From: Hemiscyllium ocellatum | Lineage: Eukaryota | Direction: 5' to 3' | Length of the DNA stretch: 64,000 nt | NCBI RefSeq assembly: GCF_020745735.1 | Contig: NC_083414.1 | Location: 28,582,001-28,646,000, forward strand | Shown here: positions 8,175 through 52,466 of the stretch, piece by piece | Layout: the number at the start of each line of letters is the position of its first letter | How positions within the stretch are numbered: position 1 is the first letter of the stretch | Notes under the pieces: generated by a model | The model's database searches: none | Told to the model about the DNA's origin: nothing | The model's input: only the letters and a program-made list of their open reading frames with translations | Translations under genes and position numbers: made by a program

Positions 8175-8300
8175 ATGTTAATGAATGTTGGCGCTATCCA
8201 GGTCGACTGTGTGCACATACTTGTGAGAATACTCCTGGGTCCTATTACTGTACCTGCAGCTCTGGCTTCAAGCTAGCCCTTGATGGCAAGAATTGTGAAG
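8175..8300 (+). CDS. FBLN2: fibulin-2 internal exon (cbEGF), phase 1-1, 126 bp
   Basis: ggcag|at ... aag|gtattt; (D)VNECWRYPGRLCAHTCENTPGSYYCTCSSGFKLALDGKNCE. Confidence 0.95.
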
Positions 8301-14236: not shown

Positions 14237-15270
14237 TGACCTCCAAGTGAAGCGAAGCTGATGTCTCCTGCTTTCTATCAACCATCCAACCATTAAACCA
14301 AAAATCTGGGTCCGCTACGTAGATGACACCTTTGTCATCACAAAACGAAACAAGATAGAAGAGATATTTAACATCATCAACAACACCCTCACAGCCATAA
14401 AGTTCACCAAGGGGGAAGAAACCGACAACAAACTCGCATTCCTGGACGTCACAGTCAAAAGAACGGACAACGGAGAGCTCAAAACCTGCATTTTCTGTAT
14501 ACGCAGGTTTGACCAAATACTTAACTACACCAGCAACCATCCCAATACACACAAACGAAGCTGTATGAGAACACTATTCCAACGAGCCACCTCACACTGC
14601 AGCACAGACGAACTTCGGAAAACAGAGGAGAACCACCTATACAATGTATTCAAGAAGAACGGATACTCAAAAAAATACAGTCCGCAGATTCCTCAAGAAC
14701 CACGACAAGCAGACCAAACACAGCCAGAAACCCTAACCACCTTACCATACATCAAAGAAGTTTCAGAAATGACAGCCAGACTACTAAGACCCCTCAAAAT
14801 CCTAGTAGTACACAAACCCACCAACACTCTCAAACAAAAACTAACAAACTTAAAAGACCCAATACAACCTATGGACAAAACCAATTTCGTCTACAAAATT
14901 CCATGCAAGGACTGCCACAAACACTACGTAGGACAAACAGGAAGAAAGTTAGCCACCAGAATACACGAACACCAGCTAGCCACAAAAAGACACGACCCTC
15001 ACTCCCTCGTAGCCCTACACACGGAGGAAAAAAAGCCATTTCGACTGGGACAACACATCTACCCTGGGACAGGCCAAGCAAAGACATGCCAGAGAATTCG
15101 TCGAGGCCTGGCACTCCAACCACAACACCATAAACAAACACATAGCTCTAGATACCATCTATCAACCCTCAGAAAACGAACAGGAAATGACATCACCACA
15201 AACCCCAGGAACCCCATCCAAGATATAAATAGAAAGCAGGAGACAACAGCTTCGCTTCACTTGGAGGTCG

Positions 15271-15310
15271 CCACTGATGATGTTACCTAGCCTGGTAATG
15301 AAACGTCTGG
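15271..15310 (+). ncRNA. minimal type I hammerhead ribozyme motif in PLE pLTR
   Basis: cca-CUGAUGA-u-guuacc(uagccu)gguaau-GAAAC-GUC-ugg. Confidence 0.75.
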
Positions 15311-20810: not shown

Positions 20811-21709
20811 TAAAACTAATATAGTCGTTCCATTGCAGTAATAATGCCAAGGGTTTCCTCAGTTTGCTAGAAGACTGGAAATATTACACTCAATGATCTT
20901 TTGAGGGCATTAATCAAGGCAGGTTAGGGTTGAGGATACAGATATGGCCAATGAGTCTAATGGATATTTCGCATTGCTTTCACTTCTGAAAATAATGGTT
21001 CATTCCTGATTATACGGGACAAATGTGCAACTGAATTGGTTTCTGTGTCTAGAATTGTGGAAATCTCTTCAGTTAATATTTAGGATTTAAAGCTGTTTGT
21101 GCTGCTGAATCTGCTTCTAATTACTGTTAAATGAAATGGAATTAGTAAAATGAGTCACTGGCCCATGTAATCAATAACTCTTGAAGCCAGAGTTGATTTC
21201 AATTGATCAGAAAGAGATTCATGAGCTTCCATCATTCCAGAAGGAGAAAATAATCAGTGTTTGACTTTACTTTGGGAAAGATATTAAAAAGCAACAAATA
21301 GAATGCAATTTATGATCCTTTGGAGCACTTGCATATTACTAAGGGATTAAGAGATACAGGGAATGGGCAGGAAAGTGGAGTTGAAGTCAAAGATCAGCCA
21401 TGATTATTATGAATGGGCAAACACATGAGGTGCTATATCATCTCCTGCTACAGTTTATTATATTAAAATGGACAGTGTGGGAAACGTAGAGTTAAGGAAG
21501 ATATTTAGCCAGCATTTTATTGAATTACAGAGCAGGTCCCAAGTGTCTAAGTGACTTACTCCAGTGTGAACGTCATTTATTCTTATGTAAGTTCAACAGC
21601 ATAGTGTTACTCTGCTCATTCTTGTCATCTGATTACAATAGTTTCAGTTTTAGCTGTATACATGTGAAATAAACAATTAAACCTGACAGTTGTGTGTAAT
21701 TTCCCACAG

Positions 21710-21833
21710 ACATTGATGAATGTGCAATAGGAACACACAACTGCACATCAACTGAGACCTGTTTCAACATCCAAGGTGGATTCAGATGCCCTGTTGTGGA
21801 TTGCCCACCAAACTATAGGAAAGTGTCTGATAT
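21710..21833 (+). CDS. FBLN2: fibulin-2 penultimate exon, phase 1-2, 124 bp
   Basis: cccacag|ac ... tat|gtaagt; (D)[40 protein letters not shown](M); N-glycosylation sequon NCT. Confidence 0.95.
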
Positions 21834-21982
21834 GTAAGTGTTTGACTATTTCCAATCCGGGAAGGTGTCTGACATGTAAGTGTTTGACTATTTCCAATTC
21901 AGGAAAGTGTCTGATATGTGTGTTTGACTATTTCCGATCCGGGAAGGTGTCTGATATGTAAGTGTTCGACTATTTCCAATCC
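21817..21982 (+). repeat. tandem array of four units (42, 42, 40, 42 bp) spanning the exon/intron junction
   Basis: units start at 21817, 21859, 21901 and 21941; consensus rggaargtgtctgatat|gtaagtgtttgactatttccaatcc. Confidence 0.95.
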
Positions 21983-23189
21983 AAGCAAATGGAGATTTTT
22001 CTTCGGGATAAAATGTAGTTCTTATTACTTTTACAATTGGTGTAGAAAGATAAGAACCATGGCAAAATACATTACAGAAAGAGGGTAGTTAGCCTCATGA
22101 GGCTATATTTTCCAGTGACTGGCAAGAACACAGGGTGCAAATGGAGCTAGTTAGTGTGCCTTTCTCTGGCTGATAAATCCTGCTGTTTTTGCAGTGTTGT
22201 CAATTTGAATATATATAGGGAGAAGCTGGATACATTGGTCAGAGCGACTGCACAAATACATCAGCTGTTTGGCAATTTTAACTTTTAGAATCATCTTACA
22301 ATGAGAACCTGAAGTATAACTCTTATTCATTGTGCTGCTCCCAATACTCCGCTCAATATCTGGGTGGAATCGGTTCGCCTGTTTCCACTTAGGGGGACGT
22401 CGTAAATTTGAGAATGGAGATTCCACATGAATGGAGTCTACTGCATCAAACCAACCTCCAGATAGCACCAGATGCCATAATGGCTCAGCTAACTATCATT
22501 CAAGACAGCTGCCTGAGAAAGGAATTATCCCTCAGAAATGCAAGTTAGTTCTGTATTCGTTCAAGGACCCAGCATGTTGAATTTATTTACAAATTAGCAG
22601 AGCTGGCATGAGACACATCAAAAATGGCCCAGCTTCAGCATTTATTTTTGCAGTCGCAGGAGAAACAGAAACAGTAAATTTTGACTTATAAATGATCCCT
22701 GGTTTGCTCTCACCATGTTTGAAATACCTCCACAATTGCGCCTTCTTCCACCCATCAACCACAATGTTCCCAGGCTCCATTTACTATTAGGCTCAGCAGA
22801 GCAGTCTGTATATCTCTGCTGCCTCTAACCGGTGAACTGTAGTAAAAAACCCATTTCATGTCTGCTGCTTTCTGATGGGATTAGATTGTCACCTGTAGCC
22901 AATTTTGCCTGAAGTTTCCAGCCATCATTTAACCATATACAAGTCCTGTATCCAACAGATACAACATCGTGAGCCAAAGGGCCTGTTCTATGCTATATTT
23001 TTCTATGTTCTATGTGCCCATTTTGAGTATGCTTTGAATTTCTGGTGAACTTTTATTTCAGTGAATTTCTCACTTTCTGACTATTCGTCATGTGTTAGCC
23101 AGCTGCACATATTCGATATTAGAGAGAGTACATTTATACAATTTCATGAATGCCAAATATTTTGCAATGTTTATACATTGAAAATCACT

Positions 23190-24295
23190 ATGTAGATAAA
23201 TGCATGGTATCACATTTTGATAAGACAAACCAGAGCAGTATTTACAGAGTTAATGGTAGGACCCTGGGAGTGTTGTCAAACAGAGAGACTTAGGGACAGG
23301 TACATAGTTCCTTGAAAGTCGGGCCACAGATAAATACGGTGGTGAAGAAGACATTTGGTATGCTTGCCTTATAGGATAAATAGACAAAGTCTCTTCCCTG
23401 GGCTGGGGGAGTCCAGAACTAGAGGGCATGGGTTTAGGGCGAGAAGGGAAAGATATGAAAGGGACCTAAGGGGCAACTTTTTCATGCAGAGGGTATTACG
23501 TGTATGGAATAAGCTGCCAGAGGAAGTGGTGGTAGCTAGTACAATTGCAACATTTAAAAGTCATCCGGATGGGTGTATGAATAGGAAGGGTTTGGAGAGA
23601 TATGGGCTGGGTGCTGGCAGATGGGACTAGATTGCGTTGGGATAGCTGGACAGCATAGATGAGTTGGACCAAAGTGTCTGTTTCCATGCTGGACATCTCT
23701 ATGACTCTAAGTAAGAAGAATTGAATAAAGGAATTAGGACATCATGTTAAGGCTGTACAAGGCATTGGTAAGCCAAATTGCAGTACTGCATATGATACTG
23801 GTTGCCCTGTTATAAGCATGATGTTATTAAACTGGAAAGGGTGCAAGAAAAGATTTACAAGGATATTACCAAGAAGGTCTAGGTTATAAGGAGAGGCTGA
23901 ACAGGCTGGTCTTTTTTTTCCCTAGGAGCGTAGGAGGTTGAGGGGTGGCCTTATAGATGTGCATAGATGGAGGGCATAGATAAGATGAATAGCCAAGGTC
24001 TTTTCCCCAGGGTGGGAAAGTCCAAAACTGGAGGGCATAGGTTTAAGGTGAGAGGGGAAAGATTTAAAAGAGACCTGAGGGCCAATGTTTTTATACAGAG
24101 AGTGGTGCTTATATGGAATGAGCTGCCAGAGGAGATGCTGGAAGTGAGTACAATTACAACATTTAGAAGACATGTACAGGAAAATGTTAGAGAGATATGG
24201 GCAAAACACAGGCAAATTGGACTAGCTGAGTTTACTGAAGCCTGGCCAGCATGGCCGAGTTGGTATGAAGGGCCTGTTTCCATGCTTAATGCCTC
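23190..24295 (+). mobile_element. two nested CR1 3' fragments (inner copy 23371-23708)
   Basis: the outer copy breaks after atgcttgcctt and resumes near 23710; both copies encode the ..GHxF..RG..NxFxQRV..WNxLP terminus. Confidence 0.8.
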
Positions 24296-24984
24296 AGTCT
24301 ACTTAATAGTGCAAACATATGTATTTGATAAGTTGTCTCTTTGAGTGCATGTTGTGAAAGCCCTAACACTTTATAAAATCACTGGTTTGAGCTCAGTTAG
24401 AAAATTGTATCAAATTTTGAGCACTGTGCTTTAGAAAGGACATCAAGCACTGGGTTGAGTAGAATGGTACCAGGGATAGGGAGTTTCACTAATCTGGGGA
24501 GATTACAAAAGCTGGATTGTTTTGAGTTGAACAGAGAAGGTGTAAGCAGAGAAGATTAATGGGAATGTTGGTGGGGGTGATCAAAATTGTGAGGGATTTT
24601 GATGGGACAGACAATGAGAAACTGTAATCACTAACCAGAGCTGTAATTTGAGCACAGATTTAAAATAATTGGCAAAATAAAATCCAATGGGAAACAAGAC
24701 TTTTTTTTGTAAAATGTCAGTGATATATGATTCCAATGTAGTTCATAAAGGTTGGTAGAAAAGTTGGTGGAAGTAGATTCAGAACTTTTGTACTGAACAT
24801 CTGTACTTTTCAGAAGTCTCTACTTAATTAGGTAGACTTTATAGGGCTGTATGAAAGGAGCATTGATGTTGTTTCAGACAGTTGGCACAGGCTCCATCAG
24901 CACCAAATGAATCTATAACATTTTGAAATACTTTCAGATCTCTACTTACCCATATGGTCTTAGTCATCATTTTTTATGTATCCA

Positions 24985-26785
24985 TAAGACCATAACACAT
25001 AGGAGCAGATATTAGGCCCTTCAGCCCATTGAGTCTGCTCTGCCATTCGATCATGGCTGATATGTTTCTCAATCCCATTCTCCCACTTGCTCCCCATAAC
25101 CCTTGATCCCCTTTAGATTAGATTACTTACAGTGTAGAAACAGGCCCTTTGGCCCAACAAGTCCACACCGACCCGCCGAAGCGTAACCTACCCAGACCCA
25201 TTCCCCTACATTAATCCCTTCACCTAACACTAGGGGCAATTTATCATGGGCAATTTACCTAACTTGCACATTTTTGGATTGTGGGAGGAAACCTGAGCAC
25301 CCGAAGGAAACTCACGCAGACACAGGAGAATGTGCAAACTCCACATAGAGAGTCACCTGAGGTGGGAATTGAACCCGGGACTCTGGTGCTGTGAGGCAGT
25401 AGTGCTAACCACTGTGCCACCGTACCATACCATCACGAATCTGTCATTCTCCTCTACAACCTTCTGTGGCAATGAATTCCATAGATTCACGACTCTCTGG
25501 CTGAGGACATTCCTCCTTATCTCCGTGCTAAAAGGTCTTCTGTTTACTATAAGGCTGTGCCCTTGGGCCCGAGTCTCTCTTACCACTGGAAACATCTTCC
25601 CAACATCCATTCTGTCCAGCTCATTCAGTATTCTGTAAGTTTCAATTAGATCCCCCCTCATCCATCTAAACTCCATTGAATATATACCCAGAGTCCTCAA
25701 ACATTCCTCATACGTTAAGCTTTTCATTCCTCGCACCATTCTTGTGAACATCTTCTGAACACACTCCAGTGCCAGTATATGGGGCCCAAAACTGCATACA
25801 ATGCTTGAAATGTGATTTGACCAGAGCCTTATCGAGCCTCAGAAGTACATCCCTGCTTTTATATTGAAGTCCTCTCAAAATAAATGCCATTTGCTTCCCT
25901 AACTACTGACACAGTAGAGAGAGAATCCTGGACTAGAACTCCCAAGTCTCTTTGCACTTCAGACTTCTGAATTTTCTCCCCATTCAGAAAACAGTCCATC
26001 CTTCTATTCTTCCTACCAAAGTGCATGACCTCACACTTTCCCACATTGTACTCCATCTGCCACTTCTTTACCCACCCTCCTAACCTATCCAAATCCTTCT
26101 GTAGCCTCTCCACCTCCTCAGTGCTACCTGTCCCTCTACCTACCTTTGTATCATCTATAAACTTAGCCAGAATGGCCTCAATTCCCTCATCTAGATCGTT
26201 AATGTTTCAAGTGAAAATCTGTGGTCCCAACACTGAGAAGGACCTTTTGATCTCCACTCTTTGTTGTCTGCTGGACAGCCAAGCTTCTATCCATGCTAGC
26301 ATTTTGCCTTCAATACCCTGGGCACTTACCTTACTCAGTAGCCTTCTGTGTGGCACCTTGTCAAAGGCCTTCTTGAAGTCCAAGGAGATAACATCCATAG
26401 GTTCTCCTTGATCTAATCTGCTCATTACTTCCTCAAAGAATTCTAGCAGATTTGCCAGGCATGACCTACCCTTGACGAAACCATGCTGACTCTGCGCTAT
26501 TTTACCATCCACTTCCAAGTATTCAGAAATCTCATCGTTCATGATGGATTCCAGGATCTACCCACGACCATAGTTAAGCTAATTGGTCTGTAATTTTCCA
26601 ACTTCTGCCTTACTTCCTTTTCAAACAAGGGTGTCACATTAGCAATTTTCCAGTCCTCTGGCTCCCTCCCTGATTCCTGAAAGATTACCACTAATGCCTC
26701 TGCCTTCAGCTATCTCCCTTAGCACTCTGGGGTGTAGTCCACCTGGACAACGTAATTTATCCACCTTTAAGCCATTCAGTTTTTG
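24985..26785 (-). mobile_element. CR1 LINE RT-to-3' fragment containing a nested SINE
   Basis: minus ORFs SQHGFVKGRSCLANLLEFFEEV, LDFKKAFDKVPHRRL, LQKDLDRLGGWVKKWQMEYNVGKC, RGDLIETY. Confidence 0.9.
25113..25422 (-). mobile_element. HE1-type V-SINE inserted in CR1
   Basis: reverse complement of the 9108 element: ttagattag tail, V-domain, B and A boxes. Confidence 0.9.
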
Positions 26786-27093
26786 TTATCCAGGTTTTGT
26801 AACAAAATAAGCAGCTTGTAAAGAGAAAATGCAACGGGTGACTAATTTGGTTTGGGTTTACTTTGCACTTGATCAAGCAGTCTGAGGTCATAACCATACA
26901 AGTTTAATTATGTTCTTCAGTCTGTTTTATGATACTGTATAATAGTAACAAAGGTTCCTGATTCTGCAATGCTTTTCCAACTCTTGCACACATTATCCTA
27001 AGTATCTGCATTGCAGACTTTTTAACTTCTACAGGAGGAAACTGTATTCTTGTTTCATTATGTGCATTAAATTAGTTGGCATTCTCTTCTCAG

Positions 27094-27451
27094 GCGCTGT
27101 GAACGCATGATGTGTCCCAACTACATGGATTGCCAGAATATGCCAGTCAGAATCACCTACTATCAGCTGACGTTTTCAACCAATGTCCAAGTTCCAAGCA
27201 CCATTTTCCGGATTGCTCCATCACCTGTGTATATAGGAGATAGCATTATCCTGACCATCACGAAAGGAAATAACGAAAATTACTTCAATACACGGAAGGT
27301 GAATGCTTATACTGGGATTGTGTATGTGCAGCGGCAGTTCATGGAATCCAAAGATTTTCTACTTGATGTTGAAATGAAACTCTGGCGTCAGGGAATGTTC
27401 ACTTCATTCCTTGCTAAAATTTATGTATTTGTTGCAGCTTATCCTTTCTAA
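27094..27451 (+). CDS. FBLN2: fibulin-2 terminal coding exon (fibulin C-terminal domain III)
   Basis: ctcttctcag|g phase 2; RCERMMCPNYMDCQNMPVRITYYQL..NAYTGIVYVQR..DFLLDVEMKLWRQG..AAYPF*. NAYTG and DVEMKLWRQG are, from recall, diagnostic of fibulin-2 rather than fibulin-1C. Confidence 0.95.
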
Positions 27452-49619: not shown

Positions 49620-52466
49620 ACGATAAGAAAGCTAGCATAAAGGTAACTTATGTGAATGTTCGTAGCATTCGTAACAAGGTTGGTGAATTAATAGCACAAA
49701 TCTCTTGAACGAATATGATTTGGTAGCCATCATAGAGACATGGTTGCAGAATGGTCATGACTGGGAATTAAATATCCAGGGGTACCAGACTATTGCAGAC
49801 AAGAATGCAAGGGAGGTGGTGTAGCTGTGACATTCAAGGACGACATCAGGGCGGTGCTGAGAGACGATACAGGCTCTACGGAGCATGAAGTCAAATCCTT
49901 TTGGGTGGAAATTAGGAATTTCAAGAAGAAAATGTTACTGAAAAGTGTAGTCTATAGGCCACCAAATAATAACATCACATTGGGGTGGGCAATAAACAAG
50001 GAAATAACTAATGCCTGCAAAAATGGTACAGCTATTATTATGGGAGATTTTAACCTGCATGTAGCTTGGTCGAACCAGCTCAGTCAGGGTAGCCTTGAGG
50101 AGGGGTTTATTGAGTGTAACCACGATAATTTTCTTGAACAGCATGCAGTGGAACCAATGAGGGAGCAAGCTATCCTAGATCTGCTCCTCTTAATGAGACA
50201 GGAATAATTAATGACCTCATAGTTAGGGATCCTCTTGGAAGGAGCGATCACAGTGTGGTTGAATTTAGAATACAGATGGAGAGTGTAAAGTTAAAATCCA
50301 ATACCAAGATCCTGTATGTGAATAAGGGGGACTATGATAGAATGAGGGAAGGCCAGGCTAAAGTAAACTTGAAACAGCAACAGTTGACAAGCAGTGGAGG
50401 ACCTTCAAAGGAAATTTATATTCTAGTGAGAAGGAAGGACAGTAAGAGGAGGGATAATCTGTCATGGGTGTCTAAGGAAAGAAGGCAGGCTATCAAAGTG
50501 AAAGAGAAGGCATACAAAATGGCCAAAAACAGCAGGGATCTAGAAGAGTGGGAAAACTTTAAATGTCAACAGAAAGCCACTAAAAGAGCTGTACAGAAAA
50601 GTCAGGTAGAGTATGAGAAAAAACTAGCACAGAATATAAAGACTGATAGCAAATGTTTCTATAAATATATAAAATGAAGAACAGTGGCGAACGTAAGTGG
50701 TGGTCCTTTAGAGGATGAGAAGGGACATTTAGTTATGAGATGTGATGTAATAGCTGAGGCATTATACAGGTACTTTGCATTGGTCTTCACAGTAGAGGAC
50801 TCTAATAACATGTCAGGAAGTGATGAAGAGACAAAGGTAGGTGAGAACATGGAAACAATAATTATTATGGAAGAGCTCGTGTTGAGTAAGCTAATGAAGC
50901 TAAGTCTCCTGGCCCTGATGGAATGCATCCCAGGGTACTAAAAGAGATGGTGGGAGAAATAGCAAGTGGACTGGTGGTAATTTTCGAAAATTTGCTGGGC
51001 TCTGGGGCAGTCCCAGTAGATTGGAAAATAGCAAATGTGACGCCACTGTTTAAAAAGGGAAGTTGACAAAAGATGGAGAATTATAGACCAGTGAGCTTAA
51101 CTCTGTAGTGGGGAAGATGCTTGAGTCTATTATCAAGGAGGAAATAGCAGGGCATCTCAAAAGAAATTGCCCCATTGTACAGATGCAGCATGGGTTCATG
51201 AAGAGCAGGTCATGCTTAACAAATCTTTTGGAACTCAATGAAGACATTTCAAGCAAGGTGGGTAACAGGGGCCCAGTATACCAAGATTTCCAAAAGGTCT
51301 TTGACAAGGTGCTGCACATGAGGTTGCTGCATAAGATAAGGATGCATGGTGTTAGGGGTAGAGTATTAGCGTGGATAGAGGATTGGTTGACTGACAGGAA
51401 ACAAAGAGTGGAGATAAATCAGTGCTGTTCTGGCTGGCAATCAGTGACTGTGGTGTGCCTCAGGGATCGGTGTTGGGACTGCAATTATTTACAATTTATA
51501 TAGATGATTTAGAATTGGGGACCACGTGCACAGTGTCAAAATTTGCTGATGACATTAAGATCAGTGGCAGAGCAAAGTGTGCAGAAGACTGTGAAACTTT
51601 GCAGAGGAACATAAATACATTGAGTGAGTGGGCTAACTTCTGCCAGATGGAATACAAAGTTAGTAAATGTGAAGTCATACATTTTGGTAGGAGTAACAGT
51701 AAAATAGATTATTACTTGAATGGTAAGAAGTTGCAGCCTGCTGATTTGCAGAGGGACCTGGGTGTCCTTGTGCATGAATCACAGAGGGTCGGTCTGCAGG
51801 TACAACACATAATTAGGAAGGCAAATGGAATTTTGTCCTTCATTGGGGTTGAGTTTAAAAGCAGGGAGGTAATGTTATAGCTGTACAAGGTGCTGGTGAG
51901 GCCACACTGGAGTACTACGTGCAGATTTGGTTTCCTTACTTAAAAAAGGATATACTGGCACTGGAGGGGGTGCAGAGGAGGTTCACTAGGTTGATTCTGG
52001 AGTTGAGGGAGTTGGCTTATGAGGAAAGGCTAAATAAATTGGGATTATATTAATTGGAATTCAGAAGAATGAGGGGGGATCTTACATATAAAATTATGAA
52101 GGGAATTGATAAAATAGAAATAGATAGGATGTTTCTACTGGTAGGTGAAACTAGGACAAGAGGGAATGGCCTCAAGATTAGAGGAAGCAAGTTTAGAACT
52201 GAATTGAGAAGGAACTTTTTCTTCCAGAAGGTTGTAAATCTGTGGAATTCCATACCCATGGAAGTAGTTGAAGGTACATCAGTAATCGCTTTTAAAGCTA
52301 AGATAGATACTTCTTTGAAAAATAAAGGAATTAAGGGATATGGTGAAAACTTGGGTAAGTGGAGCTGAGTCCACAAAAAGATCAAGCATGATCTTATTGT
52401 ATGGTGGAGCAGGCTCGAAGGGCCAGACGAACTACTCCTGCTCCTAGATCTTATGCTCTATGTTCA
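49620..52466 (+). mobile_element. near full-length CR1 ORF2 (APE endonuclease plus RT) with 3' UTR, frameshifted
   Basis: YVNVRSIRNK, ETWL, VYRPP, MGDFN, SDH, NYRPVSL, QHGF, GVPQGSVLG, KFADD, RGDL, FFQKVVNLWN. Confidence 0.92.

What the first reader, a model, noticed from the sequence alone, without database searches (positions are those of the whole stretch)
21817..21982. Tandem array multiplies the last FBLN2 splice donor; possible switch to a fibulin-2 lacking domain III
Seen: the last 17 nt of the penultimate exon plus the first 25 nt of the intron are repeated four times. Donors lie at 21834 (TAT|GTAAGT), 21876 (CAT|GTAAGT), 21918 (TAT|GTGTGT, weakened by a 2-nt deletion) and 21958 (TAT|GTAAGT). 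Reading past donor 1 gives GAT ATG TAA (stop at 21835-21837), so every downstream donor truncates the protein. Known: NMD usually needs a stop more than 50-55 nt upstream of the last junction, and the paralogue FBLN1 switches or omits domain III at the homologous junction. Inference: donor 2 is only 38 nt past the stop and has a slightly better -3 base. It could yield a stable mRNA for a fibulin-2 ending ..[11 protein letters not shown], with no domain III and an unpaired Cys. Donors 3 and 4 (80 and 120 nt past the stop) would feed NMD and tune dosage.
Basis: partly seen in the sequence, partly recalled or inferred. Interest (0 to 1): 0.78.

Follow-up and report, generated by a model that had tools for sequence, protein, structure and literature searches.

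The report
Splice-donor minisatellite in shark fibulin-2
The intron after the second-to-last coding exon of the epaulette shark fibulin-2 gene begins with four tandem copies of the exon's own splice site, a real but already known kind of repeat in which cells normally use only the first copy, so the proposed truncated fibulin-2 is possible but unsupported.

Summary
A 42-nt unit (last 17 nt of the exon plus first 25 nt of the intron) is repeated four times at 21817-21982.

The gene is Hemiscyllium ocellatum FBLN2. Both RefSeq isoforms map at 100% identity and join 21833 to 27094, so they use donor 1 and keep domain III.

This is a new member of a known class: minisatellites whose first unit spans an exon-intron boundary (human F7, CBS, IFI6, LMNB2, PDGFA). 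In F7 only the most upstream donor is used. In CBS and IFI6 the next two copies are also used. The scan has already noted the same class elsewhere in this genome (LSM1, MAPK10).

The proposed isoform switch has no support:
- No truncated isoform is on record.
- The product would end inside the last calcium-binding EGF module, with five of its six cysteines.
- The array is absent from Callorhinchus.

It is not excluded either. I could reach no shark RNA-seq junction data, and work on strong duplicated donors favours the downstream site.

One addition: each unit folds into a sense-strand-specific RNA stem-loop that presents the donor GUAA in its loop.

The parts
21710..21833 (+). Penultimate coding exon of FBLN2 (124 nt). 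It encodes the first five cysteines of the last calcium-binding EGF module and ends ...[10 protein letters not shown] + AT of the Met codon.
   Evidence: RefSeq H. ocellatum fibulin-2 X1 (P0256) residues 1112-1153 map here at 100%. Pfam EGF_CA E=2.9e-13, profile positions 1-35 of 43. Acceptor AG at 21708-21709.
21817..21858 (+). Unit 1: last 17 nt of the exon plus the authentic donor TAT|GTAAGT (GT at 21834-21835) and 25 nt of intron.
   Evidence: The annotated protein junction is 21833|27094. This unit has no private substitutions relative to the other units.
21835..21837 (+). In-frame TAA, read if donor 1 is skipped. It is a by-product of a phase-2 GTAAGT donor.
   Evidence: The same arrangement (GAT AC|G TAA GT) occurs at the single-copy Callorhinchus junction.
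21859..21900 (+). Unit 2: pseudo-donor CAT|GTAAGT (GT at 21876-21877).
   Evidence: Private changes are T>C at donor -3 and C>T in the tail.
21901..21940 (+). Unit 3 (40 nt): decayed pseudo-donor TAT|GTGTGT (GT at 21918-21919).
   Evidence: Alignment A1 shows the 2-nt deletion. U1 duplex energy is -1.9 kcal/mol, against -7.3 for donor 1.
21941..21982 (+). Unit 4: pseudo-donor TAT|GTAAGT (GT at 21958-21959). Its 9-nt site is identical to donor 1.
21818..21853 (+). Predicted pre-mRNA stem-loop of unit 1 (13 bp). The donor G+1 to A+4 sit in the tetraloop. The same fold is repeated in every unit.
   Evidence: -12.9 kcal/mol, z -4.68, 0 of 200 shuffles fold as well. Antisense RNA z -1.2. DNA z -1.6. 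Five control junctions z +1.57 to -1.55.
27094..27451 (+). Last coding exon: G of the Met codon, sixth Cys of the last EGF, fibulin C-terminal domain (domain III), and stop TAA at 27449-27451.
   Evidence: Pfam Fibulin_C E=2.3e-29. P0256 residues 1154-1271 map at 100%. It is the only Fibulin_C-coding stretch in the window.

Best explanation
This is a small, diverged minisatellite made by tandem duplication of the FBLN2 exon-intron junction. A 42-nt segment was duplicated first. The resulting 84-nt dimer was then duplicated, and the copies have drifted since.

The first copy carries the working splice donor. It is joined to the last exon at 27094 and gives the normal fibulin-2 with domain III. 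Copies 2 to 4 are pseudo-donors inside the intron. They are removed with the intron in the great majority of transcripts (my estimate: more than 90%). At most they contribute a low level of unproductive or truncated mRNA.

Shown: the array, its structure, the annotated junction, and the coding consequences of each donor. Inferred: which donor the spliceosome picks, the order of the duplications, and neutrality.
For: Array and higher-order 82-84-nt period. Units 1/3 and 2/4 share the variants at unit positions 1 and 6.

The units differ by six substitutions and one 2-nt deletion. That argues for an old, real array rather than an assembly stutter.

RefSeq X1 and X2 of H. ocellatum both use 21833|27094 and differ only by one residue at position 385.

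The VSDM|RCER junction is conserved in birds, coelacanth, sharks and rays. It is seen in spliced ray mRNA contigs.

Domain III is intact, and 117 of its 118 residues are identical to Chiloscyllium plagiosum.

Natural precedents (PMC1557585):
- In F7, the 37-bp array uses only the most upstream donor. Pseudo-sites raised from consensus value 74 to 91 are still not used.
- LMNB2 and PDGFA also use only the authentic donor.

No ...VSDM-ending isoform is on record. The truncated product would break the last cbEGF, leaving 5 of 6 Cys.
Against: No RNA-seq junction counts for this species could be reached. Donor-1 use therefore rests on a gene model and on homology.

Donors 2 and 4 are as strong as donor 1, and predicted accessibility is equal.

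Work with two strong duplicated donors finds almost exclusive use of the intron-proximal (downstream) donor once they are about 45 nt or more apart (PMC3413131). Here the spacing is 40-42 nt.

In CBS and IFI6 the second and third copies are used alongside the first.
Confidence: 0.65

Rival explanations
1. Leaky array. Donors 2 and/or 4 capture a measurable minority of transcripts (about 5-30%) as splicing noise. Donor 2 would give an NMD-resistant mRNA for a misfolded ...VSDM* protein. Donor 4 would give an NMD substrate. None of this has a selected function.
For: Donors 2 and 4 equal donor 1 in U1 pairing and in predicted accessibility. CBS and IFI6 use the two pseudo-sites next to the authentic donor. 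Strong duplicated sites favour the downstream copy. Donor 1 is the weakest of the FBLN2 donors examined in the window (-7.3 against -7.7 to -10.5 kcal/mol).
Against: F7 pseudo-sites stronger than the authentic site are silent at 37-nt spacing. No alternative isoform is annotated or on record.
Confidence: 0.2
2. One reading: a selected switch. Donor 2 makes a stable mRNA for a secreted fibulin-2 without domain III. Donors 3 and 4 feed NMD to tune dosage.
For: The arithmetic holds: 38 nt is under the 50-55-nt NMD rule, and 80 and 120 nt are over it. Donor 2 has C at -3. FBLN1 varies its C-terminus by splicing.
Against: - The product stops inside the last cbEGF with an unpaired fifth Cys. That points to misfolding rather than a designed isoform.
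- Donor 3 is nearly dead, so it cannot do much tuning.
- The array is absent from Callorhinchus.
- No such isoform is on record in five hemiscylliid or orectolobiform models.
- Substitutions in the pseudo-donors look like drift.
- There is no second domain III exon as in FBLN1.
Confidence: 0.06
3. The pseudo-donors act as extra U1 snRNP landing sites. In this reading they strengthen definition of a short exon whose own donor is weak and sits in a stem-loop, or they suppress premature cleavage in the 5.3-kb intron, without themselves being spliced.
For: Donor 1 has T at -1 and -3 and the weakest U1 duplex of the gene's donors in the window. It sits in a -12.9 kcal/mol hairpin. From general knowledge, intronic U1 sites can enhance use of an upstream donor and suppress intronic polyadenylation.
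Against: This is purely inferential. The nearest AATAAA is 1.9 kb into the intron. Relatives without demonstrated arrays keep the same junction.
Confidence: 0.05
4. Assembly artefact: the genome really has one unit.
For: Tandem repeats can be mis-assembled. No independent assembly of this locus could be reached.
Against: The four units are all different from each other: six substitutions, one 2-nt deletion, and a nested 84-nt order. Stutter or collapse errors do not produce that. The array is only 166 nt, well within single reads.
Confidence: 0.03

Closest known systems
Human F7 intron 7 37-bp VNTR (Borensztajn et al. 2006, PMC1557585)
   Same: The first monomer spans the exon-intron boundary, so the authentic donor is followed by copies of itself at about 40-nt spacing. 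The unit sizes are similar (37 and 42 nt). Use of most downstream copies would give a premature stop.
   Different: F7 has 5-9 identical copies and is polymorphic. Its unit holds only 4 nt of exon. Here there are 4 diverged copies with 17 nt of exon. One copy is stronger than the authentic donor and one has decayed. Usage is measured in F7 (first donor only) and unmeasured here.
Human CBS intron 13 and IFI6 (6-16) intron 2 donor minisatellites (as summarised in PMC1557585)
   Same: Minisatellites that reiterate the splice donor in the intron.
   Different: They have many more units (15-20 and about 26). In both, the two pseudo-sites nearest the authentic donor are also used.
Human LMNB2 (100-bp unit) and PDGFA (81-bp unit) donor minisatellites (PMC1557585)
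   Same: Junction-spanning arrays; only the authentic donor is used.
   Different: They have longer units and more copies.
Donor minisatellites noted earlier in this same genome (LSM1, 26 units; MAPK10, 15 units; scan notes s1-146943 and s1-146979)
   Same: Same species and same architecture (the exon's own donor amplified at the start of the intron).
   Different: Those arrays are much longer. This one has four units, and its copies are diverged. I did not re-examine those loci.
FBLN1 C-terminal splice variants A-D (PMC6714394)
   Same: A paralogue whose variants differ in the length and sequence of the terminal fibulin-type domain.
   Different: FBLN1 uses alternative terminal exons. Here there is only one Fibulin_C exon, and the alternative would be a truncation inside an EGF module.

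Membership tests
Exon-intron junction (splice-donor) minisatellite | Head-to-tail array of a 10-100-bp unit | tested here: met
   TRF period 42, 4.0 copies, 87% matches, score 267.
Exon-intron junction (splice-donor) minisatellite | The first unit spans the authentic exon-intron boundary, so the donor sequence recurs in the intron | tested here: met
   RefSeq protein P0256 maps with junction 21833|27094. Unit 1 covers exon -17 to intron +25.
Exon-intron junction (splice-donor) minisatellite | The copies keep a usable GT donor consensus | tested here: met
   Donors 2 and 4 give -7.4 and -7.3 kcal/mol with U1, equal to donor 1. Donor 3 is decayed at -1.9.
Exon-intron junction (splice-donor) minisatellite | The most upstream donor is the one used in vivo | not testable with these tools
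   Only gene-model support is available. No transcript contigs of this species are on record.
Exon-intron junction (splice-donor) minisatellite | Copy-number polymorphism (VNTR) | not testable with these tools
   No second individual or assembly could be reached.
Regulated alternative 5' splice site / AS-NMD switch | Transcripts or annotated isoforms from the alternative donors | tested here: not met
   H. ocellatum X1 and X2 both use donor 1. Exact look-up of ...VSDM-ending versions of seven shark models was negative. This is weak evidence, because such isoforms are often not annotated.
Regulated alternative 5' splice site / AS-NMD switch | Conservation of the alternative donors in related species | tested here: inconclusive
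   Absent in Callorhinchus (single donor). Chiloscyllium, Rhincodon and Stegostoma DNA was not retrievable because the gene range is 180-390 kb.
FBLN1-type C-terminal variation | Alternative terminal exons encoding different or absent fibulin-type domains | tested here: not met
   tblastn of domain III finds one exon only in 64 kb.

The most novel reading that the evidence does not exclude
The four-donor array is a working device. Donor choice among stem-loop-embedded, near-identical 5' splice sites sets the ratio of three outputs: full-length fibulin-2, an NMD-resistant domain III-less form (donor 2), and NMD-degraded transcripts (donor 4). If so, a minisatellite would have created a new regulated C-terminal isoform in one shark lineage.
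Probability: 0.06. Interest if true: 0.6.

Novelty: new member of a known kind. Interest (0 to 1): 0.3.

Why it matters
In itself this is an ordinary, probably neutral intronic repeat. Its value is as a natural experiment.

Two bodies of work disagree on which of several equivalent 5' splice sites wins. The F7 VNTR work says the most upstream. Work on duplicated consensus sites spaced about 45 nt or more apart says the most intron-proximal.

This array sits at the critical 40-42-nt spacing. It contains one stronger copy, one dead copy and one identical copy, and its read-out is unambiguous (full-length protein, NMD-immune truncation, or NMD substrate). Together with the longer arrays the scan noted in LSM1 and MAPK10, public shark RNA-seq could test the rule outside mammals.

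For fibulin-2 biology, only substantial donor-2 use would matter.

Tried and rejected
1. A 119-aa Logan protein starting MRCER... (P0001) looked as if it might come from mRNAs with a stop before domain III. The contigs (L001-L007) are ordinary spliced ray FBLN2 mRNAs cut up by a prokaryote-style gene caller. Rejected.

2. I tried exact look-ups of window ORFs to find independent assemblies or reads of the array: the 114-aa last-exon ORF, the 61-aa ORF across the array, and the 105-aa ORF 170 nt downstream. None is on record.

3. I tried to fetch orthologous DNA from Rhincodon, Chiloscyllium plagiosum and C. punctatum, and transcripts of H. ocellatum. The gene ranges are 176-390 kb, so no DNA was returned, and there are no transcript contigs. 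Only Callorhinchus could be read.

4. I tested whether a hairpin drove DNA slippage. As DNA the fold is only -3 kcal/mol, z -1.6. The stem depends on G.U pairs and is specific to the sense RNA. Rejected as an origin mechanism.

5. I tested whether RNA structure hides the pseudo-donors. Predicted unpaired probability is 0.40 for donors 1, 2 and 4, and 0.20 for donor 3. There is no discrimination.

6. I looked for nearby intronic polyadenylation giving the same truncation. The first AATAAA is at 23724. Nothing suggestive.

7. I looked for a second domain III exon. There is none.

8. MaxEntScan tables were not available. I used an approximate position matrix written from memory and U1 duplex energies. 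The ranking is reliable; the absolute values are not.

Full report
**Observation.**
The sequence at 21817-21982 is four head-to-tail copies of a 42-nt unit. Tandem Repeats Finder gives period 42, 4.0 copies, 87% matches and score 267. It also gives an 82-nt period with 2.0 copies at 93%. This is the only tandem repeat scoring 80 or more in the whole 64-kb window. A 31-nt core of the unit occurs three times with at most one mismatch, against none in 100 shuffles.

- The units are 21817-21858, 21859-21900, 21901-21940 (40 nt) and 21941-21982.
- The donors are TAT|GTAAGT, CAT|GTAAGT, TAT|GTGTGT and TAT|GTAAGT, after 21833, 21875, 21917 and 21957.
- The third donor has lost the AA at +3/+4.

**Gene and junction.**
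The plus strand carries a run of calcium-binding EGF exons and a final exon with a fibulin C-terminal domain. The domain III exon finds FBLN2 of birds and fishes at 65-71% identity.

A cluster look-up returned RefSeq fibulin-2 isoforms X1 and X2 of Hemiscyllium ocellatum. X1 residues 896-1271 map onto the window's seven exons, with the last two exons at 100% identity. Chiloscyllium plagiosum differs by one residue in the last exon. The window is therefore epaulette shark FBLN2.

The annotated junction is 21833|27094. It is phase 2, and the Met codon is split AT|G. X1 and X2 differ only by one Ala at residue 385, and both keep domain III. The motif VSDM|RCER is conserved from birds and coelacanth to sharks and rays. 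Spliced ray mRNA contigs show it directly.

**Consequences of the other donors.**
- Reading past donor 1 gives GAT ATG TAA (stop at 21835-21837), so donors 2-4 all encode ...[11 protein letters not shown].
- The stop lies 38, 80 and 120 nt upstream of the three alternative junctions. Under the 50-55-nt rule, only the donor-2 mRNA would escape NMD.
- The immediate TAA is a by-product of a phase-2 GTAAGT donor. It is also present at the single-copy Callorhinchus junction (GAT AC|G TAA GT).
- The exon's EGF_CA match ends at profile position 35 of 43. The sixth cysteine of this EGF lies in the last exon (RCER). A truncated protein would therefore end inside an EGF module with an unpaired fifth cysteine. 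I read that as a sign of a defective product rather than a designed isoform.

**Donor strength.**

| Donor | U1 5'-end duplex energy, kcal/mol | Note |
|---|---|---|
| 1 | -7.3 | authentic |
| 2 | -7.4 | C at -3 |
| 3 | -1.9 | 2-nt deletion |
| 4 | -7.3 | 9-nt site identical to donor 1 |
| Four other FBLN2 donors in the window | -7.7 to -10.5 | for comparison |

An approximate position matrix, written from memory, ranks donor 2 above donors 1 and 4, with donor 3 far below. The authentic donor is thus the weakest of the gene's donors examined here. Two of its copies are at least its equal.

**History.**
Units 1 and 3 share A at unit positions 1 and 6, and units 2 and 4 share G. Together with the 82-84-nt period, this indicates a 42-nt duplication followed by duplication of the dimer.

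Private changes since then are:
- two in unit 2
- one substitution plus the deletion in unit 3
- one in unit 4
- none in unit 1

This divergence makes an assembly stutter very unlikely and implies some age. Unit 1's lack of private changes fits constraint on the coding end and the working donor, but the numbers are small.

Callorhinchus milii has a single donor, a roughly 550-nt intron and no array at this junction. The array therefore arose within elasmobranchs. I could not date it more closely, because the gene spans 176-390 kb in the relatives and the tool returns no DNA for such ranges.

**What is known.**
Borensztajn et al. 2006 (PMC1557585) describe exactly this class: minisatellites whose first monomer spans an exon-intron boundary.
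- In F7 intron 7 (37-bp unit, 5-9 copies) only the most upstream donor is used.
- The F7 pseudo-sites are functional when the upstream ones are destroyed.
- Raising their consensus value from 74 to 91 does not make them compete. Only perfect-consensus copies do.
- LMNB2 and PDGFA likewise use only the authentic donor.
- In CBS and IFI6 the two nearest pseudo-sites are used as well.

Against this, Hodson et al. 2012 (PMC3413131) report results for two strong donors. These are spliced almost wholly from the intron-proximal site, with use approaching 100% at separations of about 45 nt or more. That outcome is attributed to double U1 occupancy.

The shark array, at 40-42-nt spacing and with moderately strong sites, lies between these regimes. 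The literature alone does not fix the outcome. I weight the natural-gene precedents more heavily, together with two observations here. The gene model uses donor 1. Domain III is intact and almost invariant among hemiscylliids, which would be odd if most transcripts had been diverted for a long time.

- I looked up, by exact sequence, the hypothetical ...VSDM-ending versions of seven RefSeq models (H. ocellatum X1/X2, C. plagiosum X1/X2, C. punctatum X1/X2, Stegostoma). None is in the collection. This is weak negative evidence.
- There is no second Fibulin_C exon in the window that would parallel FBLN1's alternative ends.
- FBLN1's four C-terminal variants are documented (PMC6714394), so the analogy is fair, but the mechanism would differ.

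**An addition: a stem-loop in every unit.**
Each unit folds, as sense RNA, into the same 13-bp stem-loop. Donor positions +1 to +4 (GUAA) form the loop, and positions -5 to -1 pair with +5 to +9.

| Sequence folded | Energy (kcal/mol) | z-score |
|---|---|---|
| Unit 1, sense RNA | -12.9 | -4.68 (0 of 200 shuffles fold as well) |
| Units 2-4, sense RNA | -13.7, -10.6, -11.7 | -3.1, -3.4, -2.6 |
| Antisense RNA | not listed here | -1.4 to 0.0 |
| Unit 1 as DNA | -3 | -1.6 |
| Four other FBLN2 donor windows and the Callorhinchus junction | not listed here | +1.57 to -1.55 |

- The two between-unit substitutions that fall in stem positions keep pairing (A-U to G.U, and U.G to C-G).
- The structure treats donors 1, 2 and 4 alike (mean unpaired probability 0.40). 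It cannot explain donor choice.
- Its weakness as DNA argues against a slippage-hairpin origin.

Whether it modulates U1 access is open.

**Verdict.**
The object is a new member of a known class, and the scan has already met that class in this genome (LSM1, MAPK10).

The most likely reading (0.65) is a largely silent pseudo-donor array. Next come a non-functional leak (0.2), a U1-landing-site role (0.05) and an assembly artefact (0.03). Junction counts from existing shark RNA-seq would settle it.

Noticed in passing
window 21818-21853, repeated in each unit to 21982: Each 42-nt unit folds as sense RNA into a 13-bp stem-loop with the donor GUAA in the loop (unit 1: -12.9 kcal/mol, z -4.7). The fold is absent on the antisense strand, weak as DNA, and absent at five control donor junctions. 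The two stem substitutions between units keep pairing.
   Followed up: partly
window about 8175-8300 (+): The 42-aa cbEGF exon (VNECWRYPG...KNCE) is annotated as skipped in Chiloscyllium plagiosum isoform X3 and Mustelus asterias X2. Two Scyliorhinus species have other EGF exons skipped. This suggests EGF-cassette skipping is common in shark FBLN2, although it is not annotated in H. ocellatum.
   Followed up: partly
L008 31634-31898 and 32320-32600 (Callorhinchus milii FBLN2): The elephant shark orthologue has an 89-nt x 3 tandem repeat just upstream of the penultimate exon. Its short last intron is filled with GT-rich micro- and minisatellites, some containing GTGAGT-like motifs, but there is no copy of the exon junction.
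   Followed up: no
window 14565-15290, 23355-24344, 25353-26542, 51087-51500: Long ORFs with reverse-transcriptase-like or retroelement-like translations lie in the FBLN2 introns and downstream. These are probably LINE or retroelement remains.
   Followed up: no
L001-L007 (Logan RNA contigs of a ray or skate): On these spliced FBLN2 mRNA contigs, the collection's gene caller reports a wrong-frame 140-170-aa ORF plus a 119-aa MRCER... ORF instead of the true continuous reading frame. This is a caution for reading small 'proteins' from eukaryotic Logan contigs.
   Followed up: yes
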